From Macrostomum lignano (taxonomy: Eukaryota), in the NCBI GenBank assembly GCA_002269645.1, contig NIVC01000152.1, positions 186,001-250,000 of the forward strand: 64,000 nucleotides of DNA. The letters are read 5' to 3'. The notes below the pieces were generated by a model. That model was given only the letters and a program-made list of their open reading frames with translations, had not been told where the DNA came from and ran no database searches. Shown piece after piece: positions 11,601 through 63,988 of this stretch (position 1 is its first letter; every line of letters starts with the position of its first letter). Both the position numbers and the translations under genes were made by a program.

Positions 11601-14600
11601 CCGAGTTTGCCCGAATCAGACAGCCCCAACAACAACATTGCGAAAAAAACAAAAAAAACAAAAAACATCAACAACAACAACAGAATACGCTGTTAGGTCT
11701 TATGAAAACAGCGTCACAGGGCGCGAACATTGGCAAGTAACTGACGTCATAAAACAGTCAAGTCACAAGAAAGACAAGCATTCGATATTTTTAAAGAAAC
11801 GAAGCGTCCGCTTAAGGCCTGGTCCGACCTATTAAGGCCCATGGGTCGGCAAACCCCGGCCCGCGAAGCCTCTCTAACCGGCCCTCGCGTTCTTTGTAAC
11901 TTCACAATAGCAATCCGGCCCGCTCAAGGTTTTTATCGCTTCTCAGCTCTCTTCTCTCTAATTTCCTCTCTCTTCTCTCCTCTCTCCTCTCCCCTCCCTT
12001 CTCTTTTCCCTTCTCTCTTCTCACCACTCCTCTTCTCTTTTCTCCTCTTCTCTCCTCTCCTCTCCTCTCTCCCTATTCCGGCCCGCAATCATGCGCTGTG
12101 TTCTCCATCTGGCCCTTGAAGTAAAAAAGGTTTGCCGAACCCTGGCGTAAGCCGTCCTTGATCACTGCAAAGCTAAAAACCTGCTTAAGCGAAAAACCAC
12201 TGCGTCAACATGAAGGTATCGCAACCGAATCGTGTGGCCCAAATCTCAGAAATCTTCAAGGTAAAATTTTAAACGCAAGCAAACTGCTTCAATTTTCAAA
12301 TTTCGCCGTAACTACCGCTAATATCCCAGAAATTGCTTCAAAATTGATTTATCCCATGATGATTCGCAGTCGCTATATAATTTCAACAAAATACCGAGAA
12401 AATTAGAAAACTTGATCTCACTAAAATATGAATATGAATATGATGCTGTAATAATGCCAAAATAAACGCTTAATTTAATATTATACTACTCAGCTGCTTC
12501 GAGTAGTAAGTAGTACTGACCAGTTGTAAAGTTTTACTCTCTCCATCTGTCCCTCTCACTTCTATTCATTCACAGCGGTCGTGCCAAGCCCGAAGCGAAT
12601 TCGAGTGGCGCGAAACGCCTTGAGCCTCTGACTCTGCTTACTGAGGTGAGCTGGGCTGGCATGCACCACTAAATATTATTATCATATCGCTTGTTGTATT
12701 ATTCTTGTAGAAGCATCCTTTCCTACAACGATTGCATGTTTACTAATTCCAAATGAACTTTCTTTAAGTTTAGTTGGTCATTTAAATTGTAGTAGATGGA
12801 AAGAGTTCAATTGCATCTAAATTAACCGGCTATGGTTGCTTATTGAATGAACTGATTTCAAAATATTTGCAGCGGACTATGAAGTTTTTGACAGACTCTT
12901 CCGAAAATGGCAGACGAGCCCCTGCACAGGAGCCCAGAGTAAAAAACTTGTGCATTTTCATTGCAATCTGAGTGCAGTTTAATAAATCTCAGAGCTCTGA
13001 TGTGTTGTGGTTGGCATAACAATGACCTTTTGCGGTTGCGCCAGTAACTCAAAATTTACTAATCCGATAAATTAGCTTGATCTACAGGTGTTATTAACTA
13101 ATCGCTATGCACTTTTTCAGTTAATCGATCAACTCTCGGAATTTAACAGCCAAGCAATGAGCCTTCAATTAATAAAGTTTGCGCTTAAATTTCCTAATGA
13201 ATTTCCTTAAAATTTAATTCCTACAAGCATGTATTTAGATGCAACTATCTATGCAATCTATTACACCATTGATAAATTTCACCGTTTGTTTTTAGAATTC
13301 TGCCCAACAAAATTGCAAAAAATATTATCATAACCTATTGCGAGACAATCCAACAACAGACTCACAACAAAGTGCAACAATCCAACAACAGACTCACAAC
13401 CCAATGCAAAAATCCAACAACAGACTCACAACCCAATGCAACAATCCAACAACAGACTCACAACCCAATGCAACAATCCAACAACAGACTCACAACCCAA
13501 TGCAACAATCCAACAACAGACTCACAACCCAATGCAACAATCCAACAACAGACTCACAACCCAATGCAACAATCCAACAACAGACTCACAACCCAATGCA
13601 ACAATCCAACAACAGACTCACAACCCAATGCAACAATCCAACAACAGACTCACAACCCAATGCAACAATCCAACAACAGACTCACAACCCAATGCTACAA
13701 TCGAACAACAGACTCACAACCCAATGCAACAATCCAAAAACAGACTCACAACCAAATGCTACAATCGAACAACAGACTCACAACCCAATCCAACAACAGA
13801 GTCACAACCCAATGCGACAATCCAACAACAGTCTCACAACCCAATGCGACAATCCAACAACAGACTCACAACCCAATGCGACAATCCAACAACAGACTCA
13901 CAACCCAATGCGACAATCCAACAACAGACTCGCAACCCAATGCGACAATCCAACAACAGACTCACAACCCTCCGCCCCTGCCAGACCGGCACGCCCCGCC
14001 TGACTCACCACTCCAAGCCGCGGGTGCCCACGGCCGAGCGGGTGCGCCTGCGCGACTTCACGAGCTCGCATTTCGGCCCGGCGCTGCAGCAGCGTCTTCG
14101 GCTGCTGACGGACGCGGAGGTGGCCGCTGCGACGGCGGGGCGAACGGGCAAAAGCAGTCGGCATCCGGGTGGACATCCGCCGCCAACAACGGGACGAGCC
14201 TCGGCCTGGAGGTCAGCGGTGTTTCTCGCGGCCAATCGCGGCTGTCCGAAGCGTCGGGCGGCGGCGGCGGCGGCGGCGGCGCCAAGTCGGAGCTGCAGGG
14301 CCTCATCACTGCGGGGCTCACCGGCGGCAAAAAGTCGGTGAGTTGAGCTGGTCAGGTTGAGTTGAGTCAGCTTCAGCCAGCGTCGGTCAGGTCAGGTTTG
14401 TGTCAGGTTTGTGTCAGGTTGGATCAGGTTTGGGTCAGCTTGGGTCAAGTTAAGTCAGGTTTGGGTCAGGTTTGGGTCAGATTTGGGTCAGTTTGGGTCA
14501 GGTTAAGTCAGATTTGTGTCAGCTAATTGGGTCAGGTTAAGCCAGATTTGTGTCAGCTAATTGGGTCAGGTTAAGCCAGATTTGTGTCAGCTAATTGGGT

Positions 14601-19525: not shown

Positions 19526-22500
19526 ACGCCGACGCTACCGACACTCGACGAGATCATGGACCCGCGGCCAGAGGACCCGATGCTCACTACGCTGGCATCG
19601 TCCGGTTGTGCAGCGGTGGGCGGAGCCATTAGTCCAGTCGGCCCGTTTGTCGATGCCTGGCAAGCGACGCCGACCAAAGTGGAGGAGCCGCACGAGCGCT
19701 CGGACTGTGGCGAAGGAGCCGACGACTGCTGGCTGATGTGGCTCATCGGCGAGGGCCGGTCGGAGTCTGGGGTTGGAGAAGAGTTTACTACGTATGGGAG
19801 CTCCGATGTTACATGTACGAGCTAGATGGCAAACTGCCAAGTATATCACTGACAGTCAAATGTCACTGGCAGTCAAATGTCACTGACAGTCAAATGTCAG
19901 TGGCAGTCAAATGTCACTGGCAGTCAAATGTTACTGGCAGTCAAATGTCACTGACTGTCAAATATCTTGCACTCACCAATTTAAAATAAAATTAAATCTT
20001 CAAATATTATTTCAACAATCAAAGAGTAAGTTTGATTGTTTGACGTGCTCAAGCCTTCAATGGATTAAGAAGAGATTAAGCAAGTGAATTTCACTCACAG
20101 GCCATGGGACTAACTAGCGCCTCAGTTTTAATTAGTCCGTCCTTCATCTGGCCGTACAGCCTCCCCGGATGATGATGATGTCGATGATGAAGCTGCTGAT
20201 GCTGAGCCACGGCAGCTTCGCCGCCGGCCGCGGGGCCACCCGCAGTCGATGGCATCAGCAGCTCGGCCAGTCCGCCATCGTCGTCCGACTCAAAGAAATC
20301 GGCCGGCAGCGACTCCGACATCGGGCTGGCCATTGAAATCGCGACGCCGCCGCCATTGCCGCCGCCGCTACCGCCGCCGCAGGCAGGAGCTGCAGAGAAA
20401 CCAAAATTTGAGCCTTGTTGTTGTTGTTTCTGCTGCTGCTGCTGCTGCTGCTGGCCGGCACCAGACTTGGAGCCGTATCGGCGCATTCGATTCTCCTCAG
20501 CCTTTGAGCTCCAACTTTCGCCTTTGAATTTTTTCGTAGCGTAAGCCTCGGCACCATGCACGGTTTTGATGTGCTTGCGCAGAGAGCTGGGGTCCGTGTA
20601 CCGCTTGGTGCAGCCAACCGCCGCCCGGCAGACGTACGGCTTCTCTGAGGAGTGAGTCCGGTTCTGGTGCTTGGCGCGGTCGGACGCGTTCGAGAACGCT
20701 TTCCCGCAGCCGGGCACCTCGCAGGGGTAGGGCTTCTCCCCCGTGTGCGAGCGCTGGTGCGTCTTCATGTTCTCCAGTCGGGAATAGGCCTTGTGACAGC
20801 CTTGGAACTGGTGGCGAAAGCAAAGGAAGTTACAGATCATTTGGAGCTTGTTTACGAAATTTGACTAGGCACAGAGCCCTGCACTGTCTGACAATGCCTG
20901 ATAATCCCCTGAGAGGGGAGGGACAGTTGAGGTAGAGAAGTGTCAGTGCCCAATCAGGCACAGTGCAGAGAGGGAGAGGCACATGGGAGAGAGGGAGAGA
21001 GAGAGAGAGGCACAGGAGAGAGGGAGAGACACAGGGGAGAGAATGAGAGTCACAGGGGAGAGAAGGAGAGACGGGGTAGAGAGGGAGAGGGGAACAGGGG
21101 AGAGAGGGAGAGAGGCACTGGCGAGAGAGGAAGAGGTACATGGAAGAGAAGGAGAGAGGGAGAGTCACAGGGGAGGGAGAGAGAGTCACAGGGGAGAGAG
21201 AGAGGCACAGGGGAGAGAGAGAGGCACAGGGGAGAGAAGGAGAGTCACAGGGGAGAGAGAGAGTCACAGGGGAGAGAGAGAGTCACAGGGGAGAGAGAGA
21301 GAGAGTCACAGGGGAGAGAGAGAGGCACAGGGGAGAGAGAGAGTCACAGGGGAGAGAGAGATTCACAGGGGAGAGAAGGAGAGTCACAGGGGAGAGAGAG
21401 ATTCACAGGGGAGAGAGAGACACGGGAGAGGGGAGGGACAGTTGAGGTAGAGAAGTGTCAGTGCCCAATCAGTGAAAACTTATTTCAGCTCACATTGCAT
21501 TTATACGGCTTTTCTCCCGTGTGTCGCCGCACGTGTACATTGAGCATGTACAGCGCTTTGAAGGGCTTCAGGTGCCGGTTGCAGTCCTGCCAGTAGCAGG
21601 CGAACTCCTTGCGATCGCAATTCTTCACGTGCAGCTCATTAACGTGCTGAAATATTCCAGGATAGAAAACTTAACTCTTCACATTTAGTAGCCCTAGAAA
21701 CAATCAGTTCTAATTAACTGTGTCATTTTTTCAATGAAAGCTAGCCATTTTAGGTACTGCCTTACAACAAGTTTGCACTGCAGATTTTATTCCAGATAGT
21801 TTCTTAGACACAAAATTTTCTGATCGTCTACTTCTATGGCCAGTCCTTTTCAAATTGTTGCCAGTCAAATGGCCTGGCCGCCCCGCGAAAACCCGGGGTT
21901 CGGACCATAGACTATAGCTTTTTCTGCTCTCAAGCATTAGCAGCCTGCAGCTGGTGTCTGTGGCCGCCCTAACCCAGACGGCTGCTAAATACACTGGGCA
22001 CATCTAAGTTTAGCGCCTCACCTCAACCAGTTCAGCGTTGGTCTCGAACTTGGCACCGCAGTTCTCCCAGCGGCAGTCGGTCTCGCCCGACGCTGTCTCT
22101 CCGTCGTCGTCGTCCAGTTCGCCGTCTGCGCTGCAGCCGCCGCCGCCGCCGCCGCCGCCAACGCTGCTTCCCTCGAGGCCGCAGGACGAGCTGCCCTGTG
22201 GACTGGTCAGGGCCGAGTGTTGCGGCGGGGCTACTCCGGGAGACACGGATGGAGCGCCCGATGGCCTGAAGATCGACATTGGCTGCGGCTGCTGCGGCAT
22301 CGGCGGCTGCGACGGCGGCGCCGGCGGCGGCGGTGGCTGCGGTGTGAACAGCGGCGACCCGCTGCCAAAAGAGGCAGCTGACAGATGCCCGATGGAGCCC
22401 TGGCTGCCCTTGGAGCTGGCGCAGGGCGACCGGCGCAGGCGCGGTATCCAGGACAGGCAGTCGTGCGACGCGGTCACCTGGCTCAAATCCATTCCGCTGC

Positions 22501-46546: not shown

Positions 46547-49500
46547 ATGCTCCTGATGGAACAGGCCACTCTGGCAGATCCGGTGAGAGAAAATCTTTTG
46601 ATGCCTGTTCTGCTCGCAATGACGATATCGCCGTAGGCGTTGCGCCAGGGTGCCTGCAGCTGCAGCCCTCCTGCAAGTATTATATACACGTAATATTTTT
46701 AGCCAAAAGTCGTAAACCTGTGATACCGGCCTTGTGCCCTCTGGTCATCTGAGTACTGTAAAATTCCCCTAGTGTCCTTGATGATGTGATGCATGGATTC
46801 CCCAAGGAGCATCTGGACCTCGGCAGCACCAAAAGTATCCCCTGAACTGCGACAGGCATTTTTATCATAAGTCGTGCATTATTTATTACCCCAATATCCA
46901 CCCCAGTCAAATGCAAGCGAGTTCGAGGTGATCCAGCTAGTTCGCATCGGGGTCTCCGGTCGGCAAGGACTCAGCGCATCCGGCCTGTGCCTCATCACTT
47001 TGTACGCCCTGATCTCCGCAGCCTCCCTGGCAGGCAACGGATTGTTCCTGTTTCTCAGCCTCCGCTACAGAGGCCTCAGGCGGCACATCTCCTACATCAT
47101 GATGAGCTTAGCTGGTTCCAATTTGCTAGTCACCTGCATCTGCGTGCCAGCCTCTGCTTACAGACTCTTCTACCTGAGCTGGGGTCTCGGCGAGCTCGGC
47201 TGCAAGCTCGTCATGTTTGTCGAAGGTGAGATGACAGCGCGGGCAGCTGCAGTAGAAGCGGACTAACTGTGTGTAGGAGGACTGCAGTCTCGCCAAGTCG
47301 TGCCAATTTCACTGGAAAATTCATTGGCGAGACTCCTGTGTGAGTGTTTTAGGCTATAAATTCACAGCATCTCAGCTGGACTTTCCAATAGCAAGTGCGT
47401 GATGATAAAAATTGATATTTGCAAGGAGGGCTGCAGGCACCCTGGCACCCTGAAGCTTGGGATTGTGAAGCTTGGGGATTGTGAAGCTTGGGGATTGTGG
47501 AGCTTGGGATTGTGAAGCTTGGGGATTGTGAAGCTTGGGGATTGTGAAGCTTGGGATTGTGAAGCTTAGGGATTGTGGAGCTTGGGATTGTGAAGCTTAG
47601 GGATTGTGGAGCTTGGGGATTGTGAAGCTTGGGGATTGTGAAGCTTGGGGATTGTGGAGCTTGGGGATTGTGAAGCTTGGGGATTGTGGAGCTTGGGGAT
47701 TGTGGAGCTTGGGGATTGTGAAGCTTGGGGATTGTGAAGCTTGGGGATTGTGAAGCTTGGGGATTGTGGAGCTTGGGGATTGTGGAGCTTGGGGATTGTG
47801 AAGCTTGGGGATTGTGAAGCTTAGGGATTGTGGAGCTTGGGATTGTGAAGCTTGGTGATTGTGAATCTTAGGGATTGTGAAGCTTGGGGATTGTGAAGCT
47901 TGGGGATTGTGAAGCTTGGGGATTGTGAAGCTTGGGGATTGTGGAGCTTGGGATTGTGAAGCTTGGGATTGTGAAGCTTAGGGATTGTGGAGCTTGGGAT
48001 TGTGAAGCTTGGGGATTGTGAAGCTTGGGGATTGTGAAGCTTGGGGATTGTGAAGCTTGGGGATTGTGGAGCTTGGGGATTGTGGAGCTTGGGGATTGTG
48101 AAGCTTGGGGATTGTGAAGCTTAGGGATTGTGGAGCTTGGGATTGTGAAGCTTGGTGATTGTGAATCTTAGGGATTGTGAAGCTTGGGGATTGTGAAGCT
48201 TGGGGATTGTGAAGCTTGGGGATTGTGAAGCTTGGGGATTGTGGAGCTTGGGGATTGTGGAGCTTGGGGATTGTGAAGCTTGGGGATTGTGAAGCTTGGG
48301 GATTGTGGAGCTTGGGGATTGTGGAGCTTGGGGATTGTGAAGCTTGGGGATTGTGAAGCTTAGGGATTGTGGAGCTTGGGGATTGTGAAGCTTGGGGATT
48401 GTGAAGCTTAGGGATTGTGGAGCTTGGGATTGTGAAGCTTGGTGATTGTGAATCTTAGGGATTGTGAAGCTTGGGGATTGTGAAGCTTGGGGATTGTGAA
48501 GCTTGGGGATTGTGAAGCTTGGGGATTGTGGAGCTTGGGATTGTGAAGCTTGGGATTGTGAAGCTTAGGGATTGTGGAGCTTGGGATTGTGAAGCTTGGG
48601 GATTGTGGAGCTTGGGGATTGTGAAGCTTGGGATTGTGAAGCTTGGGGATTGTGAAGCTTAGGGATTGTGAAGCTAAGGGATTGTGAAGCTTGGGATTGT
48701 GAAGCTTAGGGATTGTGAAGCTAAGGGATTGTGAAGCTTGGGGATTGTGAAGCTTGGGATTGTGAAGCTTGGGATTGTGAAGCTTGGGATTGTGAAGCTT
48801 GGGGATTGTGAAGCTTGGGATTGTATTGAGAATCTGCGGTACACGCTCGAGTTCATGCAGGACAAATTCTAGCAGATAAATTGCCCAAATTATCAGACCG
48901 AGCAGCAGAATATTCCTTGCTCGCTCATCCGTTTCCACGCTGCCGATAGTTTAGGCGCAGCCATGCGGAGACGCAACCGGTCCGTCTTGGAGATCGCTGA
49001 GCCATCCGGATCGATGAATGATCCCAATTTATTTAGGCCCGAATATCCGACAGTTGGAGTTAATTTCTTGTTTCAGGGGTGCATTTAGCCATGATCTTAA
49101 CGGGGTGCTATAGCCTGCATGCACATGCGAGTTTGTCTGCTCGTCTCCTCAGTGAGGCAGCGAGTGAGTTCATCAATGAGATCTTGTGTTACTGAGAGAG
49201 ATCATGTGTTCTTGAGAGAGATCATGTGTTACTGAGAGAGATCATGTGTTCTTGAGAGAGATCATGTGTTACTGAGAGAGATCATGTGTTCTTGAGAGAG
49301 ATCATGTGTTACTGAGAGAGATCATGTGTTCTTGAGAGAGATCATGTGTTCTTGAGTGAGATCATGTGTTCTTGAGTGAGATCATGTATTTTTGAGTGAG
49401 ATTATGTGTTCTTGAGTGAGATCATGTGTTCTTGAGAGAGATCATGTGTTCTTGAGAGAGATCATGTGTTACTGAGAGAGATCATGTGTTCTTGAGTGAG

Positions 49501-50784
49501 ATTATGTGTTCTTGAGTGAGATCATGTGTTCTTGAGTGAGATCATGTGTTCTTGAAAGAGATCATGTGTTCTTGAGTGAGATCATGTGTTCTTGAGTGAG
49601 ATCATGTGTTCTTGAGTGAGATCATGTGTTCTTGAGTCAGATCATGTGTTCTTGAGTGAGATCATGTGTTCTTGAGTGAGATCATGTTTTCTTGAGTGAG
49701 ATCATGTGTTCTTGAGTCATATCATGTGTTCTTGAGTGAGATCATGTGTTCTTGAGTGAGATCATGTGTTCTTGAGTGAGATCATGTGTTCTTGAGTGAG
49801 ATCATGTGTTCTTGAGTGAGATCATGTTTTCTTGAGTGAGATCATGTGTTCTGAAGTTAGTTCAATCAGCAAGTTGGTGACTGTTCGTCATTGACTAACA
49901 CACAAACCCCACCCAATCGCCCCCGAGCAGCCCTGGCCCTGGCCGTGAACAGTTTCTCCCTGGCCAGCGTGGCCATCATCCGGGCCCGCCAGAGCGCCCT
50001 GATGATCCCGCCCAGCCAGGCTTCGAACCGCGGCCTGCGCCTTGCCGTGCCGGCCATCTGGCTGGTGGCCGCCCTGGTCAGTGTGCCCGCCCTGTTCGCC
50101 GTGTCCCTGCAGCAGATCGGCATGTCCGACCTGCTCAACCTGACCTCGCTGACCTCGCCGCAGACTTGGCCGCCAAGCAATTGGACGGACGCAGTTGCTT
50201 CATCTTCGCCGGGTAGGCCAGTGCTCCAGCTGTGCTCCGAGCATCGAAGCAGCGATGTTCAAGGCCGGACTAGCCAGAAGATCTACTCGGCATATTTCCT
50301 GCTCATTCTGTTCCTGTCGCCCTGCATAGTTCTGATGTTCTCCTACGGTTTCACAGCTCGCTTCATCACCAGGCAGTTCGCCCGCCTGCAGGCCAGGGCA
50401 CCGCAGCAGCCGGACACGCAGTTCGCTGCCGGCCTCACCCGACGGCCCGGCCGGTCGCAGAGCAGCAGCGCCGGCCGACACACGCCGCAGGCTGCGGCCG
50501 CCTGCCACGCCAGGGAGCTGCAGAAGCGGACAGTGAAAACTGTCGTAGTACTTGTAGCATTCTTCTTCTGCGCCTGGTTTCCCAAGGATCTGATCATTGC
50601 GCTGCAGGATTTTGTGTTCTACGATCAGCAGAGTCAGGCCGTGGCGGCGCTGCTGACCAAGTTCTATCCCTACACGCAGGCGCTGATCTACTTGCACAGC
50701 GCGCTCTGCCCCCTGCTCTACTGGTGCCTCAGTCGGGTCTTTCGACGGTACGTCTGTCGGGCGTTTCCCTGCCGGCGAGTCTGA
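46547..50784 (+). CDS. Class A (rhodopsin-like) GPCR of the neuropeptide-receptor type, 402 aa
   Basis: Exons 46547-46582, 46907-47225, 49931-50784 (GT-AG, phases 0 and 1, 1209 nt; branch point CTAAC at about 49895). N-glycosylation site NAS; TM1 GN (LAGNGLFL), TM2 SLAGSNLL, ECL1 W...GCK, TM4 IW...SVP, ECL2 C, TM5 P...Y, TM6 CAWFP, TM7 SALCPLLY, helix 8 FRRY with C-terminal Cys. Exon 1 is less certain. Confidence 0.9.
47451..48824. repeat. GPCR-intron minisatellite, 15-16-bp unit TTGGGGATTGTGAAGC
   Basis: Unit read directly. Confidence 0.98.
49178..49852. repeat. GPCR-intron minisatellite, 20-bp unit GAGATCATGTGTTCTTGAGT, about 34 copies
   Basis: Unit read directly. Confidence 0.98.
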
Positions 50785-52751: not shown

Positions 52752-53580
52752 GGCTAATTCTTGACTGAATCTGAGCTAATTATTGACTGAATCTGGGCTA
52801 ATTCTTTACTGAATTCAAGCTAGTTCTTGACTGAATTCTAAGCTAATTCTTGACTGTATCTGAGCTAATTCTTGACTGAATCTGGGCTAATTCTTTACTG
52901 AATTCAAGCTAGTTCTTGACTGAATTCTAAGCTAATTCTTGACTGAATTCTAAGCTAATTCTTGACTGTATCTGAGCTAATTCTTGACTGAATCTGGGCT
53001 AATTCTTGACTGTATCTGAGCTAATTCTTGACTGAATTCTAAGCTAATTCTTGACTGAAACTGAGCTAATTCTTGACTGAATCTGGGCTAATTCTTGACT
53101 AAATCTGGGCTAATTCTTGACTGAATCTGAGCTAATTCTTGACTCAATCTGAGCTAATTCTTGACTCAATTCTAAGCTAATTCTTAACTGTATCTGAGCT
53201 AATTATTGACTGAAACTGAGCTAATTCTTGACTGAATCTGAGCTAATTATTGACTGAATCTGAGCTAATTATTGACTGTATCTGAGCTAATTCTTGACTC
53301 AATTCTAAGCTAATTCTTAACTGTATCTGAGCTAATTATTGACTGAAACTGAGCTAATTCTTGACTGAATCTGAGCTAATTATTGACTGTATCTGAGCTA
53401 ATTATTGACTGAATCTGAGCTAATTATTGACTGTATCTGAGCTAATTATTGACTTAATCTGAGCTAATTATTGACTGAATGTGGGTTAATTCTTGACTGA
53501 ATGTGGGCTAATTCTTGACTGAATCTGAGCTAATTCTTGACTGAATCTGGGCTAATTCCTGACTGAATCTGGGGTAACTC
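52752..53580. repeat. Minisatellite, 22-23-bp unit GACTGAATCTGAGCTAATTCTT
   Basis: Unit read directly. Confidence 0.96.
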
Positions 53581-54015
53581 CCTGACGGAAATCTGAGCTA
53601 CTGCATGACGTAATAAATACAGATCAACGGCAGCTGCGTTTCCAGCCCAGTTTCCTAAAGGTCCCTGACTCTGTGTAAGTCTCAGGAACTCTGATCCAGC
53701 TTTATACTTACTAGTTCTGAACTCAATTTTCGAAACTATTTGTCGAAGGTAAGGCAGAACTTTACTTACCGTTCAGGATTTCCCGAATGCAAATAATTAT
53801 GGGAATTTTCTGGAATTTTCCCAGCCGGAGATGCCCGTATAAATCCCTCCGCTGCACCAGATGGTCGCAGAAATGAGTTGGAGATTAGCTCAGTGAGGTC
53901 TTTTTAGATTAATGCACATTTGGCCTGACCAAACTGCCTTGATCAATGTTAAGGGATTTCACTATCGAGAAAAGGTGGGCATTACTTTGCCCATATAAGC
54001 CCTGCATGCATGAGA

Positions 54016-57000
54016 AAATGGATTGCTAATTTACAGCCATCATGGATGAAGGTATAGAATGGATTGCTAATCTATAGCCATCATGGATGAAGGTATAGAA
54101 TGGATTGCTAATCTATAGCCATCGGGGATGAAGGAATAGAATGGATTGCTAATCTATAGCCATCGGGGATGAAGGTATAGAATGGATTGCTAATCTATAG
54201 CCATCGGGAATGAAGGTATAGAATGGATTGCTAATCTATAGCCATCATGGATGAAGGTAAAAAATGGATTGCTAATCTATAGCCATCACGGATGAAGGTG
54301 TAGAATGGATTGCTAATCTATAGTCATTACGTATGAAGGTATAGAATGGATTGCTAATCTATAGCCATCACGGATGAAGGTGTAGAATGGATTGCTAATC
54401 TACAGCTTGAATGTATAAAATGGATTGCTAATCTATAGCCATCACGGATGAAGGTGTAGAATGGATTGCTAATCTATAGCCATCATGGATGAAGGTATAG
54501 AATGGATTGCTAATTTACAGCCATCATGGATGCAGGTATAGAATGGATTGCTAATCTATAGCCATCATGGATGAAGGTATAGAATGGATTGCTAATCTAT
54601 AGCCATCATGGATGAACGTATAGAATGGATTGCTAATCTATAGCCATCATGGATGAACGTATAGAATGGATTGCTAATCTATAGCCATCATGGATGAACG
54701 TATAGAATGGATTGCTAATCTATAGCCATCATGGATGAAGGTAAAAAATGGATTGCTAATCTATAGCCATCACGGATGAAGGTGTAGAATGGATTGCTAA
54801 TTTACAGCCATCATGGATGAAGGTATAGAATGGATTGCTAATTTACAGCCATCATGGATGCAGGTATAGAATGGATTGCTAATCTATAGCCATCATGGAT
54901 GAACGTATAGAATGGATTGCTAATCTATAGCCATCATGGATGAACGTATAGAATGGATTGCTAATCTATAGCCATCATGGATGAAGGTAAAAAATGGATT
55001 GCTAATCTATAGCCATCACGGATGAAGGTGTAGAATGGATTGCTAATCTATAGTCATTACGTATGAAGGTATAGAATGGATTGCTAATCTATAGCCATCA
55101 TGGATGAAGGTGTAGAATGGATTGCTAATCTACAGCTTGAATGTATAAAATGGATTGCTAATCTATAGCCATCACGGATGAAGGTGTAGAATGGATTGCT
55201 AATCTATAGCCATCATGGATGAAGGTATACAATGGATTGCTAATCTATAGCCATCGGGGATGAACGTATAGAATGGATTGCTAATCTATAGCCATCATGG
55301 ATGAACGTATAGAATGGATTGCTAATCTATAGGCCATCATGGATGAACGTATAGAATGGATTGCTAATCTATAGCCATCATGGATGAAGGTGTAGAATGG
55401 ATTGCTAATCTACAGCTTGAATGTATAAAATGGATTGCTAATCTATAGCCATCACGGATGAAGGTGTAGAATGGATTGCTAATCTATAGCCATCATGGAT
55501 GAAGGTAAAAAATGGATTGCTAATCTATAGCCATCACGGATGAAGGTGTAGAATGGATTGCTAATCTATAGTCATTACGTATGAAGGTATAGAATGGATT
55601 GCTAATCTATAGCCATCATGGATGAAGGTGTAGAATGGATTGCTAATCTACAGCTTGAATGTATAAAATGGATTGCTAATCTATAGCCATCACGGATGAA
55701 GGTGTAGAATGGATTGCTAATCTATAGCCATCACGGATGAAGGTATAGAATGGATTGCTAATCTATAGCCATCGGGGATGAACGTATAGAATGGATTGCT
55801 AATCTATAGCCATCATGGATGAACGTATAGAATGGATTGCTAATCTATAGCCATCATGGATGAACGTATAGAATGGATTGCTAATCTATAGCCATCATGG
55901 ATGAAGGTATAAAATGGATTGCTAATCTATAGCCATCATGGATAAACGTATAGAATGGATTGCTAATCTATAGCCATCATGGATGAACGTATAGAATGGA
56001 TTGCTAATCTATAGCCATCATGGATGAACGTATAGAATGGATTGCTAATCTATAGCCATCATGGATGAAGGTAAAAAATGGATTGCTAATCTATAGCCAT
56101 CACGGATGAAGGTGTAGAATGGATTGCTAATTTACAGCCATCATGGATGAAGGTATAGAATGGATTGCTAATTTACAGCCATCATGGATGAAGGTATAGA
56201 ATGGATTGCTAATCTATAGCCATCATGGATGAACGTATAGAATGGATTGCTAATCTATAGCCATCATGGATGAACGTATAGAATGGATTGCTAATCTATA
56301 GCCATCATGGATGAACGTATAGAATGGATTGCTAATCTATAGCCATCATGGATGAAGGTATAAAATGGATTGCTAATCTATAGCCATCATGGATGCAGGT
56401 ATAGAATGGATTGCTAATCTATAGCCATCATGGATGAACGTATAGAATGGATTGCTAATCTATAGCCATCATGGATGAACGTATAGAATGGATTGCTAAT
56501 CTATAGCCATCATGGATGAAGGTAAAAAATGGATTGCTAATCTATAGCCATCACGGATGAAGGTGTAGAATGGATTGCTAATCTATAGCCATCACGGATG
56601 AAGGTGTAGAATGGATTGCTAATCTATAGTCATTACGTATGAAGGTATAGAATGGATTGCTAATCTATAGCCATCACGGATGAAGGTGTAGAATGGATTG
56701 CTAATCTACAGCTTGAATGTATAAAATGGATTGCTAATCTATAGCCATCACGGATGAAGGTGTAGAATGGATTGCTAATCTATAGCCATCATGGATGAAG
56801 GTATACAATGGATTGCTAATCTATAGCCATCATGGATGAAGGTATAGAATGGATTGCTAATCTATAGCCATCATGGATGAACGTATAGAATGGATTGCTA
56901 ATCTATAGCCATCATGGATGAACGTATAGAATGGATTGCTAATCTATAGCCATCATGGATGAACGTATAGAATGGATTGCTAATCTATAGCCATCATGGA

Positions 57001-58631
57001 TGAAGGTATAGAATGGATTGCTAATCTATAGCCATCATGGATGAAACGTATAGAATGGATTGCTAATCTATAGCCATCATGGATGAACGTATAGAATGGA
57101 TTGCTAATCTATAGCCATCATGGATGAAGTATAGAATGGATTGCTAATCTATAGCCATCATGGATGAACGTATAGAATGGATTGCTAATCTATAGCCATC
57201 ATGGATAAACGTATAGAATGGATTGCTAATCTATAGCCATCATGGATGAACGTATAGAATGGATTGCTAATTTACAGCCATCATGGATGAAGGTATAGAA
57301 TGGATTGCTAATTTAGCCATCATGGATGAAGGTATAGAATGGATTGCTAATCTATAGCCATCAGGATGAAGGTATAGAATGGATTGCTAATCTATAGCCA
57401 TCATGGATGAAGGTGTAGAATGGATTGCTAATCTATAGCCATCATGGATGAACGTATAGAATGGATTGCTAATCTATAGCCATCATGGATGAACGTATAG
57501 AATGGATTGCTAATCTATAGCCATCACGGATGAAGGTATAGAATGGATTGCTAATCTTACAGCCATCATGGATGCAGGTATAGAATGGATTGCTAATCTA
57601 TAGCCATCATGGATGAAGGTATAGAATGGATTGCTAATCTATAGCCATCATGGATGAACGTATAGAATGGATTGCTAATCTATAGCCATCATGGATGAAG
57701 GTAAAATGGATTGCTAATCTATAGCCATCACGGATGAAGGTGTAGAATGGATTGCTAATCTATAGCCATCATGGATGAAGGTATAGAATGGATTGCTAAT
57801 CTATAGCCATCACGGATGAAGGTGTAGAATGGATTGCTAATCTACAGCTTGAATGTATAAAATGGATTGCTAATCTATAGCCATCACGGATGAAGGTATA
57901 GAATGGATTGCTAATCTATAGCCATCATGGATGAAGGTATAGAATGGATTGCTAATTATAGCCATCATGGATGAGGTATAGAATGGATTGCTAATCTATA
58001 GCCATCATGGATGAAGGTATAGAATGGATTGCTAATCTATAGCCATCATGGATGAAGGTATAGAATGGATTGCTAATCTATAGCCATCATGGATGAACGT
58101 ATAGAATGGATTGCTAATCTATAGCCATCATGGATGAACGTATAGAATGGATTGCTAATCTATAGCCATCATGGATGAAGGTATGGATTGCTAATCTATA
58201 GCCATCACGGATGAAGGTGTAGAATGGATTGCTAATTTACAGCCATCATGGATGAAGGTATAGAATGGATTGCTAATTTACAGCCATCATGGATGCAGGT
58301 ATAGAATGGATTGCTAATCTATAGCCATCATGGATGAACCTAATCTATAGCCATCATGGATGAAGGTATAGAATGGATTGCTAATTTATAGCCATCAGGG
58401 ATAAACGCATAGAATGGATTGCTAATCTATAAGCCATCAGGGATGAACGCATAGAATGGATTGCTAATCTATAGCCATCAGGGATGAACGCATAGAATGG
58501 ATTGCTAATCTATAGGCCCTCATGGATGAACGTATAGAATGGATTGCTAATCTATAGGCCATCATGGATGAATGTATAGAATGGATTGCTAATCTATAGC
58601 CATCATGGATGAAGGTGTAGAATGGATTGCT
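54016..58631. repeat. Satellite array, 41-bp unit GAATGGATTGCTAATCTATAGCCATCATGGATGAAGGTATA, about 112 copies (4.6 kb)
   Basis: Unit read directly; variant cassettes recur. Confidence 0.99.
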
Positions 58632-59145: not shown

Positions 59146-60153
59146 AATCAGTTCAGAATCAGTTCAGAATCAGTTCAGAATCAGTTCAGAATCAGATCAG
59201 AATCAGTTCAGAATCAGTTCAGAATCAGTTCAGAATCAGATCAGAATCAGTTCAGAATCAGTTCAGAATCAGTTCAGAATCAGTTCAGAATCAGATCAGA
59301 ATCAGTTCAGAATCAGATCAGAATCAGTTCAGAATCAGATCAGAATCAGTTCAGAATCAGTTCAGAATCAGTTCAGAATCAGTCCAGAATCAGTTCAGAA
59401 TCAGTTCAGAATCAGTTCAGAATCAGTTCAGAATCAGTTCATAATCAGTTCAGAATCAGTTCAGAATCAGATCAGAATCAGTTCAGAATCAGTTCAGAAT
59501 CAGTTCAGAATCAGTTCAGAATCAGTTCAGAATCAGATCAGAATCAGTTCAGAATCAGATCAGAATCAGTTCAGAATCAGTTCAGAATAAGTTCAGAATC
59601 AGTTCAGAATCAGTTCAGAATCAGATCAGAATCAGTTCAGAATCAGTTCAGAATCAGATCAGAATCAGTTCAGAATCAGTTCAGAATCAGTTCAGAATCA
59701 GTCCAGAATCAGTTCAGAATCAGTTCAGAATCAGATCAGAATCAGTTCAGAATCAGTTCAGAATCAGTTCAGAATCAGATCAGAATCAGTTCAGAATCAG
59801 ATCAGAATCAGTTCAGAATCAGATCAGAATCAGTTCAGAATCAGTTCAGAATCAGTTCAGAATCAGTCCAGAATCAGTTCAGAATCAGTTCAGAATCAGT
59901 TCAGAATCAGTTCAGAATCAGTTCATAATCAGTTCAGAATCAGTTCAGAATCAGATCAGAATCAGTTCAGAATCAGTTCAGAATCAGTTCAGAATCAGTT
60001 CAGAATCAGTTCATAATCAGATCAGAATCAGTTCAGAATCAGTTCAGAATCAGTTCAGAATCAGATCAGAATCAGTTCAGAATAAGATCAGAATCAGTTC
60101 AGAATCAGTTCAGAATCAGATCAGAATCAGTTCAGAATCAGATCAGAATCAGT
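59146..60153. repeat. Minisatellite, 11-bp unit GAATCAGTTCA / GAATCAGATCA, about 90 copies
   Basis: Unit read directly. Confidence 0.98.
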
Positions 60154-60375
60154 TTAGTTTAAATCCCTTCAGTTCATTACGAGTTAAAAGTGAGTTCAGA
60201 GCAAAAGTCATAATTAGCAACCAGATTGAGTTCACAATCTCAGCGAACAATGCTGTCTGCACGAGTCAAGCCCGTATATTTGAGATGCTGTTTGGATTGA
60301 GTTCACCACGACTCTAACTGCAGACTCATGGCGTCACTAGTCTAGTGTTTTTATTTATTAAAAAGATTTTAAGAG

Positions 60376-60699
60376 TCAAGCAGCCGAACGCCACCAGATC
60401 CGTCTGAAGCGCTGACCCAGTCGCCCTTGCAGGCGTCTCTGCTGCCGCATCAGCAGCTGCCCGATGCCGCGGTCGCTGGTCCATCGTCGAGTCTCCCGCT
60501 CGCCTGGTGGTTCTCCCTCATCCTGCGGAGCAGCGGGCCGCCGCTTGCCCATGGCCGGGAAGCCGGGACTGATGACGCCGTGATGGCGCCTGCCTGATCC
60601 GGCGAAGAAGTCGAAGCCTCCGGCGTCGACCTCGGAGGGAGCCAAGCTGATGGCAGCCACCAGCAGCAGCAGCAGCACCTGCAGCCAGGTGAATCGCAT
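60376..60699 (-). CDS. Secreted neuropeptide/prohormone precursor, 107 aa
   Basis: ATG at 60699 (alternative in-frame ATG at 60708). Signal peptide MRFTWLQVLLLLLVAAISLAPSEVDA, then GGFDFFAGS-GRR and HHGVISPGFPAM-GKR (Gly + dibasic = amidation/convertase sites), further RR sites, TGA at 60376-60378. GC-rich coding-like composition. Confidence 0.8.
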   Translation of the reverse strand: MRFTWLQVLLLLLVAAISLAPSEVDAGGFDFFAGSGRRHHGVISPGFPAMGKRRPAAPQDEGEPPGERETRRWTSDRGIGQLLMRQQRRLQGRLGQRFRRIWWRSAA

Positions 60700-61169
60700 T
60701 GAAATCATTATTAACGCTTGACAGATAACAGCCTGATTTTGCTTTCGTATTTCCTGCACGGAATTATCGCAGGCAATGAGGCCTGAACGGACCGCCGTTC
60801 TGGCTTTGCTTTTATATCCTCGCTTAGCTGTCCGCATTCCTCATTAGTGGATCCATCAATCGCTTTGACAGGTTCTGATAATCAAAGACTGTCAAATGGG
60901 CTCGTGCCGAACTTGGCTTTGCCGTCTCTTTGAGCTCGAATGGATACGCAGATGCGCAACTGCGCACTCCGGCGACAACTTTGTGGAAATACAACAACGT
61001 GCCAACTGTCTGTAATTATCAAAGCCTGAAATTTTGTGTCCTGTGTGAATGAAACTAACGGTGAATTGAAAGCAATTATCTCTTATTTAGGCCGTGGGGT
61101 CTAAATTTAGCACACTTCATGCTGTACTGCAACTGGTAATCCGGTTCTGACTGGCTTATTCCGACCTTG

Positions 61170-61960
61170 AAGTTGTTAATCCAGAAGTTTTTATCCCTAA
61201 GCCTGAAGCTTCATCCATGATCCTGAAGCTTTCATCCCTAATCCTGAAGCTTTCATCCATGATTCTGAAGCTTTCATCCATGATCCTGAAGCTTTCATCC
61301 ATGATCCTGAAGCTTTCATCCATGATCCTGAAGCTTTTATCTATGATCCTGAAGCTTTCATCCATGATCCTGAAGCTTTTATTCATGATCCAGAAGTTTT
61401 TATCCCTAATCCTGAAGCTTTCATCCATGATCCTGAAGCTTTTATCTATGATCCTGAAGCTTTCATCCATGATCCTGAAGCTTTTATTCATGATCCTGAA
61501 GCTTTCATCCATGATCCTGAAGCTTTCATCCATGATCCTGAAGCTTTCATCCATGATCCTTAAGCTTTCATCCATGATCCTGAAGCTTTCATCCCCAATC
61601 CTAAAGCTTTCATCCATGATCCTGAAGCTTTCATCCCTAATCCTGAAGCTTTCATCCCTAATCCTGAAGCTTTCATCCCCAATCCTAAAGCTTTCATCCA
61701 TGATCCTGAAGCTTTCATCCCCAATCCTAAAGCTTTCATCCATGATCCTGAAGCTTTCATCCCTAACCCTGAAGCTTTCATCCATGATCCTGAAGCTTTC
61801 ATCCCTAACCCTGAAGCTTTCATCCATGATCCTGAAGCTTTCATCCCTAATCCTGAAGTCATCATCCGTAATCCTGAAGTCATTCATCCCTAATCCTGAA
61901 GTTTTCAGCCTTAATCTTGAATGCTTCATTCTTAATCCTGAAGTTTTCACCATCCTTAAC
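61170..61960. repeat. Minisatellite, 21-bp unit ATCCTGAAGCTTTCATCCATG
   Basis: Unit read directly; explains the MDESFRI/MILKLSS ORFs. Confidence 0.97.
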
Positions 61961-62229
61961 ATGAATTAATCTCTCCTATTCAGATATTACTTTATTATGC
62001 ACTTATCGCGCAGAGTTCATGAAGTCAGCAGCCGATTCTGTACAAAATCTACCGAATTCTTCTGCGTAAAACAGCCGCTAAAATCTGGCAAGGAATATTG
62101 AATATAGAGTTCGAGGTGGCAAAGTGTTCTCCATTGCCTTCTGTAGTCAATTCGATATTAAATATAAATATAAACAAAAAATTAAACATGTAATTAGCAG
62201 TAGCAGAAAGCATTGGGTTGGTCTCTAGG

Positions 62230-62614
<385 letters not shown>

Positions 62615-63007
62615 TCGCAGTTTTTATTTGTTTCTTGTTAGCAACGCACTGAATGGCAAGCAGGTATTTTCCTCCAATAGTGCAGCAGCAGTAACAGGCC
62701 GTGCTCAGTTCCTCGTCGGGAATCTGCATGAGCTTTGATCCCCTCTGTCTCTGGGATGAGCAATCGCACGGGCTCATCCCTCCACGCCCGCCATTGGCCC
62801 GCCAGCGGGTAGGATGTTAAAACTAAACAAAAATCCTTGCTGGCAGCTCACGCGCTAAAAACTTTTAAAAAATTCGATACCATTGAACTTGGACAGAATT
62901 TCTTTTTATCGAGCTATTTATCTCGCAACTCGCTCGAAAGATTTTGCTACTCAGCAGCTGAGCACGCCTCTCGAATTTCGGAAGTCTCTTCTTCAAGCAA
63001 TTTTGCA

Positions 63008-63988
63008 ATGCCGTCTTTGCTTGGATGGCTGCTTATTGCCGTGCTGTTGCTTTCGGCTCCGGATTTCCCGAAAGCGGATGCTTCAAGCCTGAAGGTGGCT
63101 GTGGTGCTCGAGAGCTCCGGCGCATTGAATCGCAGCCTCATTGACAACGCCTTCGCCAGGCGGGTGGCTACCAACTGGCGACTGAGCAGCGGCCGCAGCC
63201 TCCAACCTGTTGTGCTGGACGCTTCATCCGCAACTCCAGCATCCCCGTCCTGCTCTGCTGCTGCGGCTGTGCGACTCCGTGAGTTATTCTATTCAGACAT
63301 CCCCGACTCAGACATCCCCGACTCAGACATCCCCGACTCAGACATCCCCGACTCAGATATCCCCGACTCAGATATCCCCGACTCAGACATCCCCGACTCA
63401 GATATCCCCGACTCAGACATCCCCGACTCAGACATCCCCGACTCAGACATACCCGACTCAGACATCTCCGCCTCAGATATCCCAGACTTAGACATCCCCG
63501 ACTCAGACATCCCCGACTCAGACATACCCGACTCAGACATCTCCGCCTCAGATATCCCCGACTCAGACATCCCCGACTCAGACATCCCCGACTCAGACAT
63601 ACCCGACTCAGACATCTCCGCCTCAGATATCCCAGACTTAGACATACCGGACTCAGATATATCCACGACTCAGTCATCTCCGACTCAGACATCCCCGACT
63701 CAGATATCCACGACTCAGACGTCATTGACTCAGACGTTCCGACTCAAAAAATGTCTCCGACTCAGTCATTATTGAACCATTCTTAACCCACTCAAGCCCT
63801 TCACTCCACTAACTGATTCTTCCCTAATCCCCTGTCCCCCCACCCCACAGTGTGCTCCCAATCGAACCTGTCGGCACTGCTCGCCATCGGACAGTGCAGC
63901 TTCCTTGCTCAGTTGAGATCGGCGGCGGCCAGCCTGCAGTTGCCGACCGTGGCTCTGCCGACACAGCTGTGCAGCGGGCTGGAGTTTG
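63008..63988 (+). CDS. N-terminal exons of a membrane receptor with a type-1 periplasmic-binding (ANF/LIVBP) domain, most likely an ionotropic glutamate receptor subunit or a receptor guanylyl cyclase; continues beyond the window
   Basis: Exon 63008-63278 (signal peptide MPSLLGWLLIAVLLLSAPDFPKADA, beta-strand LKVAVVL, NRS sequon) with donor C|GTGAGT. Exon 63851-63988 after CCCCACAG reads LCSQSNLSALLAIGQCSFLAQLRSAAASLQLPTVALPTQLCSGLEF with donor G|GTGAG. Phase 1 is consistent. The pattern C...AII/LLAIG...xLxLPxV is typical of this fold. Confidence 0.7.
63293..63765. repeat. Intronic minisatellite, 15-bp unit CAGACATCCCCGACT
   Basis: Unit read directly; the SDIPD run in ORF 62837..63775 is intron read-through. 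Confidence 0.96.

What the first reader, a model, noticed from the sequence alone, without database searches (positions are those of the whole stretch)
60376..60708. Prohormone predicting two unfamiliar amidated peptides
Seen: signal peptide, then GGFDFFAGS-G-RR and HHGVISPGFPAM-G-KR, plus basic-site-flanked spacers (WTSDRGIGQLLMRQQ). Established: Gly followed by a dibasic site yields C-terminal amides via PC1/2, CPE and PAM. The predicted products are GGFDFFAGSamide and HHGVISPGFPAMamide. I cannot assign them to a known family, so they may be lineage-specific neuropeptides.
Basis: partly seen in the sequence, partly recalled or inferred. Interest (0 to 1): 0.7.

Follow-up and report, generated by a model that had tools for sequence, protein, structure and literature searches.

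The report
Orphan flatworm neuropeptide precursor gene
This is a real, transcribed, single-exon gene of the flatworm Macrostomum lignano whose small secreted protein looks like a classical neuropeptide precursor for two amidated peptides of no known family; this is plausible but fairly ordinary, and no experiment has tested it.

Summary
The minus strand at 60708..60376 encodes a 110-aa protein with these parts:
- a hydrophobic signal sequence;
- GGFDFFAGS-G-RR;
- HHGVISPGFPAM-G-KRR;
- an acidic spacer;
- a cysteine-free, Arg/Trp-rich C-terminal tail with three more RR sites.

The window is Macrostomum lignano. The ORF matches GenBank PAA71461.1 ("hypothetical protein BOX15_Mlig029622g1, partial") at 99% identity, one of three annotated genomic copies. 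That annotation was built from RNA-seq, so a transcript exists.

Other support:
- A TATA box lies upstream, the 5'UTR has no ATG, and two AATAAA signals follow the stop.
- The CDS is 66% GC against 38-45% in the flanks.
- The ~2.5%-diverged copy differs at 5 CDS positions, 4 of them synonymous (p≈0.02), and both peptides with their processing sites are identical.
- A crude prohormone filter finds only this ORF in the window and none in 100 simulated windows.

No relative was found in about 5.8 billion proteins, in a full HMMER scan, in JGI metagenomes, or in the planarian and tapeworm tables that I could search.

The closest known look-alike is the molluscan small cardioactive peptide precursor (FPRMamide against FPAMamide), but it fails that family's defining motif.

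Verdict: a probable lineage-restricted neuropeptide or peptide-hormone precursor. It is a new member of a known kind and of moderate interest. A peptide-receptor-like GPCR gene lies 9.6 kb away.

The parts
60376..60708 (-). Complete single-exon CDS of the prepropeptide (110 aa plus TGA). A second in-frame ATG at 60699 would give 107 aa (MRFTW...).
   Evidence: 99% identical to PAA71461.1. GC is 66% (GC3 74%) against 38-45% in the flanks.
60622..60708 (-). Predicted signal peptide, residues 1-29. It has an n-region with Arg5, the h-region FTWLQVLLLLLVAAISL and the c-region APSEVDA. The predicted cut is VDA|GG.
   Evidence: The hydrophobic core has a mean Kyte-Doolittle value of 3.55. AlphaFold models a helix at residues 3-22. 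The -3/-1 rule was applied by eye; SignalP was not available.
60586..60621 (-). Peptide 1 with its processing signal: GGFDFFAGS (60595-60621) followed by G-R-R. Predicted product GGFDFFAGS-NH2, [M+H]+ 903.3995.
   Evidence: Identical in all genomic copies.
60538..60585 (-). Peptide 2 with its processing signal: HHGVISPGFPAM (60550-60585) followed by G-K-R-R. Predicted product HHGVISPGFPAM-NH2, [M+H]+ 1248.6306.
   Evidence: Identical in all genomic copies.
60484..60537 (-). Acidic, Pro-rich spacer PAAPQDEGEPPGERET followed by RR. Net charge about -3 (computed with the leading Arg57).
   Evidence: Modelled as disordered. Carries 2 of the 4 synonymous differences in the diverged copy.
60379..60483 (-). 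C-terminal 35-aa cationic tail WTSDRGIGQLLMRQQRRLQGRLGQRFRRIWWRSAA. Net charge +8, amphipathic, no Cys, with internal RR sites at residues 91-92 and 102-103.
   Evidence: Hydrophobic moment up to 0.86. AlphaFold helix at residues 78-108 with pLDDT about 75. The only non-synonymous paralogue difference (R92P) falls here and removes one RR site.
60709..60771 (-). 5'UTR, minimum extent. It is open in frame and has no ATG, which is why GenBank calls the protein 'partial' with 21 extra N-terminal residues.
   Evidence: P0001 and P0002 start at 60771, and P0003 starts at 60768. No ATG is present.
60809..60816 (-). TATAAAAG box, 38-45 nt upstream of the 5' end of the transcript-derived model.
   Evidence: Conserved in all copies.
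60350..60359 (-). Two overlapping AATAAA polyadenylation signals, 17-26 nt after the stop codon.
   Evidence: One AATAAA is retained in the diverged copy.

Best explanation
This is a bona fide small gene of Macrostomum lignano that encodes a 110-residue neuropeptide or peptide-hormone precursor.

Shown here:
- It is a TATA-driven, intronless gene with a transcript-derived gene model.
- The protein has a hydrophobic leader.
- Two short peptides are each followed by Gly plus a di- or tribasic site.
- An acidic spacer and a cationic helical tail follow.
- The protein has no globular fold and no cysteine.

Inferred from the established secretory-peptide pathway (signal peptidase, prohormone convertase PC2 or PC1/3, carboxypeptidase E, peptidylglycine alpha-amidating monooxygenase):
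- The leader is removed at VDA|GG.
- Convertases cut after RR41 and KR56.
- Carboxypeptidase trims the basic residues.
- The exposed Gly is converted to a C-terminal amide.
- The products are GGFDFFAGS-NH2 and HHGVISPGFPAM-NH2, released from dense-core vesicles to act on G-protein-coupled receptors.

The acidic spacer and cationic tail probably serve charge balancing or sorting, or yield extra non-amidated fragments. The peptides belong to no recognised family, so the gene is best treated as a lineage-restricted (macrostomid or flatworm) orphan precursor.
For: - The sequence and coordinates are exact.
- The organism and the existing gene model are identified. The GenBank models come from RNA-seq-based transcript assembly plus TransDecoder.
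- A TATA box, an ATG-free 5'UTR and AATAAA signals are present.
- The CDS forms a GC-rich island.
- Three genomic copies exist. The ~2.5%-diverged copy has 4 synonymous and 1 non-synonymous change, where about 26% synonymous would be expected (binomial p=0.019). Both peptides and their G-basic sites are unchanged.
- It is the only ORF in the window that passes a prohormone filter, against 0 of 100 simulated windows.
- AlphaFold gives a leader helix, a disordered peptide region and a C-terminal helix, with no fold.
- There is no Pfam domain.
- PC2-dependent, amidated peptides are documented in flatworms (Collins 2010, PMC2953531).
Against: - There is no direct evidence of neuronal expression, processing or peptides.
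- SignalP and NeuroPred were not run.
- No orthologue from another species was found, so the classic signature of conserved peptides with a diverged spacer cannot be tested. The paralogue comparison rests on only 5 substitutions.
- Neither peptide carries a recognised family motif.
- The gene ID was absent from the supplementary tables searched, so its tissue of expression is unknown.
- The cationic amphipathic tail also fits another kind of secreted peptide precursor.
Confidence: 0.65

Rival explanations
1. It is a host-defence (antimicrobial-type) peptide precursor. The functional product would be the C-terminal Arg/Trp-rich amphipathic helix, or its RR-delimited fragments, released from an acidic pro-region. 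That would follow the layout of many animal antimicrobial peptide precursors: signal, acidic propiece, basic site, cationic peptide. The two short amidated peptides would be by-products or co-products.
For: The tail has net charge +8 and a hydrophobic moment up to 0.86, and it ends in RFRRIWWR. The preceding spacer has net charge -3. AlphaFold models residues 78-108 as one helix.
Against: Two perfectly formed amidation signals directly after the leader are hard to explain as by-products. The single non-synonymous paralogue change puts a helix-breaking Pro in the middle of the tail, which hints at weaker constraint there, though this is only one change. Internal RR sites would chop the helix into 7-15-residue pieces. 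No homology to any antimicrobial peptide family was found.
Confidence: 0.12
2. It is a small secreted protein of a non-neural gland (adhesive, prostate/seminal-fluid, rhabdite or pharyngeal gland) that convertases do not process. The G-dibasic motifs would then be incidental in an Arg/Gly-rich, fast-evolving sequence.
For: After the leader the protein is very rich in Arg (16) and Gly (13), which raises the chance of G-R-R-type strings. M. lignano expresses many lineage-specific small secreted proteins. No homologues were found.
Against: Simulations with the window's own composition never produced a leader plus two G[KR][KR] sites. The gene ID is absent from the reproduction-related and germline or neoblast gene tables searched, which is only weak evidence. 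The two sites frame peptides of typical neuropeptide length right after the leader.
Confidence: 0.13
3. It is a divergent flatworm orthologue of the molluscan small cardioactive peptide (SCP/sCAP) precursor. Peptide 2 (…GFPAM-NH2) would be a degenerate …FPRM-NH2.
For: The overall layout is the same: a precursor of about 110-136 aa, two short amidated peptides immediately after the leader, then a long C-terminal part. In register, three of the last four residues match (F-P-x-M-NH2). The SCP features are taken. sCAP is listed among Bilateria-level families.
Against: The defining YXXFPRM motif is not met: there is no Tyr at -7 and no Arg at -2. Peptide 1 lacks the motif entirely. The conserved Cys residues of the SCP C-terminal region are absent, since this protein has no Cys. 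Neither protein search gave a hit to any SCP precursor.
Confidence: 0.05
4. It is not a functional coding gene, but a transcribed ORF that resembles a prohormone by chance.
For: There are no cross-species homologues. The evidence for selection rests on five substitutions.
Against: The substitutions are biased towards synonymous changes. The CDS is a GC-rich island with high GC3. The promoter and poly(A) signals are canonical. The filter found nothing in 100 simulated windows. The ORF is intact in all three genomic copies.
Confidence: 0.05

Closest known systems
Flatworm 'npp/spp' orphan neuropeptide prohormones (Schmidtea mediterranea, Collins et al. 2010, PMC2953531; parasitic-flatworm npp genes of McVeigh 2009 and Koziol 2016)
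   Same: Small precursors with a signal peptide and short peptides flanked by Gly plus basic residues. Many are lineage-specific and grouped only as 'miscellaneous amidated peptides'. Processing depends on PC2.
   Different: No sequence or motif match to any planarian prohormone or peptide in Tables S1-S7, nor to the Taenia npp material held. The planarian families (RL/RMamide, RFamide, RRVVamide, Wamide, pedal peptide, NPY-like) do not include -AMamide or -GSamide peptides.
Molluscan small cardioactive peptide (SCP/sCAP) precursor, e.g. Aplysia P09892
   Same: Precursor size, two short amidated peptides placed directly after the signal peptide, a long C-terminal remainder, and a peptide 2 C-terminus of F-P-x-M-NH2.
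   Different: It lacks the family-defining YXXFPRM motif, with Ser at the Tyr position and Ala at the Arg position. Peptide 1 is unrelated. The conserved cysteines are absent. There is no detectable sequence similarity.
Met-amide peptide families (tachykinins FxGLM-NH2; bombesin/GRP/neuromedin B GH[LF]M-NH2)
   Same: A C-terminal Met-amide. A neighbouring GPCR whose best solved-structure matches include the neuromedin-B and bombesin receptors.
   Different: The motifs do not align in register: G-F-P-A-M against F-x-G-L-M or G-H-F/L-M. The motif comparison is from my own knowledge and is not a database test.
Cationic antimicrobial peptide precursors (signal, acidic propiece, cationic amphipathic peptide)
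   Same: An acidic spacer followed by a basic site and a +8 amphipathic helical tail rich in Arg and Trp.
   Different: The two canonical amidation cassettes sit upstream. There is no homology to any antimicrobial peptide family, and activity is untested.

Membership tests
Neuropeptide / peptide-hormone prohormone (generic class) | N-terminal cleavable signal peptide | tested here: met
   There is an Arg in the n-region, a 17-residue uncharged hydrophobic core (Kyte-Doolittle 3.55) and a VDA|G site that obeys the -3/-1 rule. AlphaFold models a helix at residues 3-22. SignalP itself was not available.
Neuropeptide / peptide-hormone prohormone (generic class) | Candidate peptides flanked by di- or tribasic convertase sites, with Gly as amide donor | tested here: met
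   …AGS-G-RR and …PAM-G-KRR, plus three further RR sites.
Neuropeptide / peptide-hormone prohormone (generic class) | Gene is transcribed | tested here: met
   GenBank model BOX15_Mlig029622g1 and two sister models. The annotation is derived solely from RNA-seq transcript assemblies. The raw reads were not inspected.
Neuropeptide / peptide-hormone prohormone (generic class) | Peptide cores and cleavage sites conserved, spacers free to vary, among relatives | tested here: inconclusive
   Only recent paralogues are available. The peptides and their sites are identical, with 4 synonymous changes and 1 non-synonymous change in the tail. No orthologue was found.
Neuropeptide / peptide-hormone prohormone (generic class) | Expression in neurons or endocrine cells; mature amidated peptides detectable | not testable with these tools
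   No expression atlas or peptidome was accessible. The gene ID is absent from the supplements searched.
Small cardioactive peptide (SCP/sCAP) family | YXXFPRM(amide) motif in every SCP | tested here: not met
   Peptide 2 ends S-P-G-F-P-A-M and peptide 1 ends F-F-A-G-S. The motif definition is from PMC8735849.
Small cardioactive peptide (SCP/sCAP) family | Conserved cysteines in the C-terminal part of the precursor | tested here: not met
   The protein contains no cysteine.
Small cardioactive peptide (SCP/sCAP) family | Detectable precursor sequence similarity | tested here: not met
   No hit other than its own cluster in the word-indexed search or the full HMMER search.
Planarian prohormone families (Collins 2010) | Shared C-terminal peptide motif or precursor similarity | tested here: not met
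   The strings PAMGK, AMGK/R, PAMG, AGSGR, GSGRR, GSGKR, FDFF, GFDF and PGFP are absent from Tables S1-S7.
Cationic antimicrobial peptide precursor | Acidic propiece followed by a cationic amphipathic mature peptide | tested here: met
   The spacer has net charge -3, and the tail has net charge +8 with a hydrophobic moment up to 0.86 and a predicted helix. This is an architectural resemblance only.
Cationic antimicrobial peptide precursor | Antimicrobial activity, or expression in epithelial or immune cells | not testable with these tools
   Requires a bench assay.

The most novel reading that the evidence does not exclude
The two amidated peptides may be the ligands of the peptide-receptor-like rhodopsin GPCR encoded tail-to-tail only 9.6 kb away (exons at 46874-47266 and 49891-50784). 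Almost nothing but satellite DNA lies between the two genes. That would make a physically linked, lineage-specific ligand-receptor pair. Alternatively, the gene may be the long-missing flatworm representative of the SCP family. Either reading would give an entry point for deorphanising a flatworm peptide GPCR.
Probability: 0.06. Interest if true: 0.6.

Novelty: new member of a known kind. Interest (0 to 1): 0.35.

Why it matters
Flatworm peptidergic signalling is only partly catalogued, and most flatworm peptide GPCRs are orphans. Macrostomum lignano is a flatworm model with established transgenesis (PMC5730564). A validated new precursor with two defined amidated peptides would provide synthetic ligands for receptor deorphanisation. 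Its compact TATA promoter could also serve for neuron-subtype reporter lines. If the peptides are conserved in parasitic flatworms they could bear on anthelmintic target work, but nothing found here suggests such conservation. As it stands this is an incremental addition: one more orphan prohormone, predicted but not validated.

Tried and rejected
- **Homology searches.** The word-indexed search of about 5.8 billion proteins found only the gene's own cluster. Pfam gave nothing. The full HMMER scan of 1.84 billion representatives found the gene's own cluster plus P0004, a 2073-aa Glu/Gly-rich repeat protein whose score comes from nine low-complexity repeats; I rejected it as spurious. The JGI metagenome scan gave 600 pattern matches, none confirmed by tblastn.
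- **Exact-sequence look-ups.** Look-ups of the 110-aa and 153-aa forms, made to find RNA-seq contigs, returned nothing on record. This is uninformative about expression.
- **Literature.** The peptide strings gave only irrelevant hits such as plasmid names. The gene ID gave no hits in full text or in the supplements of three M. lignano transcriptome papers. 'Ml-npp' terms gave nothing relevant. McVeigh 2009 (PMC2749192) and McVeigh 2012 (PMC3862435) are not held, and I did not try to fetch Koziol 2016, so an earlier listing cannot be excluded.
- **Families considered and rejected from my own knowledge of motifs, not database tests.** Achatin (GFxD tetrapeptides in multiple copies), pedal peptide/orcokinin, myomodulin (RL/RMamide), allatostatin-A/buccalin (FGL/GGLamide), tachykinin, bombesin, and orexin (two peptides after the leader, orexin-B ending in Met-amide but much longer).
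- **The fragment LQGRLGQRF-RR.** It ends in RF but has no Gly, so it is not an RFamide.
- **Other candidates in the window.** A relaxed prohormone scan found one more weak candidate (11390-11668, minus strand, a single G-RR). I judge it a chance match.

Full report
**What is there.** The minus strand from 60708 to 60376 is an uninterrupted 111-codon reading frame. It encodes MISMRFTWLQVLLLLLVAAISLAPSEVDAGGFDFFAGSGRRHHGVISPGFPAMGKRRPAAPQDEGEPPGERETRRWTSDRGIGQLLMRQQRRLQGRLGQRFRRIWWRSAA. A mechanical ORF list extends the frame upstream to an ATG at 60837. That extension is untranslated leader that happens to be open in frame.

**Organism and existing annotation.** A search of about 5.8 billion proteins returned one cluster at 99% identity. 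It is GenBank PAA71461.1, 'hypothetical protein BOX15_Mlig029622g1, partial [Macrostomum lignano]'. The cluster has three members on three contigs of assembly GCA_002269645.1.
- The window is 100% identical to the NIVC01000152.1 copy in every unique segment tested.
- The NIVC01001556.1 copy is nearly identical.
- The NIVC01001164.1 copy is 1-5% diverged across the unique segments tested (about 2.5% over the gene region).

According to the genome paper, the GenBank models are derived only from RNA-seq transcript assemblies, with boundaries set from experimental 5' and 3' data and ORFs called by TransDecoder (PMC5730564). A model here therefore means a transcript exists. The 'partial' flag arises because the 5'UTR is open in frame.

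**Gene anatomy.**
- A TATAAAAG box sits at 60816-60809, which is 38-45 nt upstream of the 5' end of the models (60771 or 60768).
- The 63-nt leader contains no ATG, so the first AUG is the one at 60708, which has an A at -3.
- Two overlapping AATAAA signals lie 17-26 nt after the stop.
- The CDS is 66% GC (GC3 74%), embedded in flanks of 38-45% GC.
- It is single-copy in the window and has no intron.
- Satellite arrays flank it on both sides: an 11-bp unit x92 downstream and a 21-bp unit x37 upstream. The same satellite families flank the other genomic copies.

**Is it more than chance, and is it coding?** A deliberately crude filter asked for a Met-ORF of 50-400 aa, an uncharged hydrophobic decamer near the N-terminus and at least two G[KR][KR] sites. 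It picks out this ORF alone in all six frames of the window. It picks none in 100 order-2 Markov simulations of the window. Against the diverged copy, the CDS carries five substitutions. Four are synonymous in this frame, where about 26% synonymous would be expected (binomial p = 0.019). The single amino-acid change is R92P in the tail. Both predicted peptides, their Gly residues and their basic sites are unchanged. The sample is small, but it points to purifying selection on the protein.

**Predicted processing (inferred, not shown).**
- The leader has a basic n-region, a 17-residue hydrophobic core and a c-region APSEVDA. By the -3/-1 rule the best cut is VDA|GG. APS|E is a weaker alternative and would give EVDAGGFDFFAGS-NH2.
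- Convertase cleavage after RR41 and KR56, carboxypeptidase trimming and amidation of the exposed Gly would give GGFDFFAGS-NH2 ([M+H]+ 903.3995) and HHGVISPGFPAM-NH2 (1248.6306).
- Downstream come an acidic Pro-rich spacer (net charge -3) and a 35-residue tail (net charge +8) with further RR sites.
- AlphaFold, run on the single sequence (mean pLDDT 64), models a leader helix (3-22), a disordered stretch that carries both peptides and the spacer (23-77), and a C-terminal helix (78-108). There is no globular fold.

**Relatives and known families.** Nothing beyond the gene's own cluster was found.
- Pfam gave nothing.
- The full HMMER scan of 1.84 billion representatives gave only a spurious repeat protein.
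- The JGI metagenome scan gave no confirmed relative.
- The peptide strings do not occur in the searchable literature, and the gene ID is not mentioned.
- The planarian prohormone tables (families) contain none of the diagnostic strings. Neither does the tapeworm npp material held.

The nearest look-alike I could name is the molluscan small cardioactive peptide precursor. It has the same layout and size, and peptide 2 ends F-P-A-M-NH2 against F-P-R-M-NH2. That family is defined by YXXFPRM and by conserved cysteines in the C-terminal part (PMC8735849). Both features are absent here, so the gene is not a member. Two flatworm catalogues (McVeigh 2009; Koziol 2016) could not be read, so an earlier listing under an npp name cannot be excluded.

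**Rivals.**
- The acidic-spacer and cationic-helix arrangement also resembles antimicrobial-peptide precursors. The Arg/Trp-rich end (RFRRIWWR) makes this worth a simple assay. However, the two canonical amidation cassettes, the internal RR sites and the Pro substitution in the tail argue against the tail being the main product.
- A non-neural gland protein with incidental G-RR strings is possible, given the Arg/Gly richness, but the simulations do not support it.
- A non-functional ORF is unlikely.

**Verdict.** This is most likely a lineage-restricted neuropeptide or peptide-hormone precursor. It is currently annotated only as a hypothetical protein, and it has no evidence yet for cell type, processing or function. 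It is a new member of a well-known kind, of which flatworms have many orphans, so I rate its interest as moderate (0.35).

The most intriguing side observation is a two-exon rhodopsin-type GPCR whose best solved-structure matches are all peptide receptors. It lies convergently 9.6 kb away, with mostly satellite DNA in between. Whether it is the receptor for these peptides cannot be tested here.

Noticed in passing
window 46874-47266 (+) and 49891-50784 (+): These are two exons of a rhodopsin-family GPCR (Pfam 7tm_1, E=1e-16 for the second exon). The best matches of the joined translation among solved structures are all peptide receptors: neuromedin-B/bombesin, neurotensin, QRFP, NPFF, ghrelin, CCK and orexin, with E-values from 1e-15 to 1e-10. 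The DRY position appears to read IRA. The gene lies tail-to-tail with the prohormone gene, 9.6 kb away, and most of the DNA between them is satellite. It could be a coincidence or a linked ligand-receptor pair.
   Followed up: partly
window 52753-53600, 54017-58631, 59146-60154, 61179-61953, 62230-62614, 63293-63746: Dense tandem-repeat landscape around the gene: a 22-bp unit x38, a 41-bp unit x~107 (followed by variant 42/83-bp arrays to 58631), an 11-bp AATCAGTTCAG unit x92, a 21-bp unit x37, (CAGA)x96 and a 15-bp unit x30. The long ORFs at 61156-61969 and 62049-63775 are translations of these repeats, not genes. The same satellite families flank the other genomic copies, with different array lengths.
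   Followed up: partly
L001 (NIVC01001164.1), L002 (NIVC01000152.1), L003 (NIVC01001556.1): There are three genomic copies of the locus. Two are near-identical and one is 1-5% diverged. From my own knowledge, this fits the recent genome duplication and partial redundancy described for the M. lignano DV1 assembly. The window matches L002 exactly in every unique segment tested.
   Followed up: yes
window 60709-60837 (-): The 5' leader is open in frame with the CDS. This makes GenBank label the protein 'partial', with 21 spurious N-terminal residues (CDNS[A/V]QEIRKQNQAVICQALI). The true start is most likely the ATG at 60708.
   Followed up: yes
window 20091-20840 (-): ORF with C2H2 zinc-finger domains (Pfam zf-C2H2, E=1e-9), probably an exon of a zinc-finger gene. 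Eight other ORFs of 190-525 aa elsewhere in the window (10 scanned in all) had no Pfam hit.
   Followed up: no
window 11390-11668 (-): A 92-aa Met-ORF with a hydrophobic N-terminus and a single G-RR site. It is the only other ORF that passes a relaxed prohormone filter. It contains several Cys and has no second amidation site, so it is probably a chance match.
   Followed up: no
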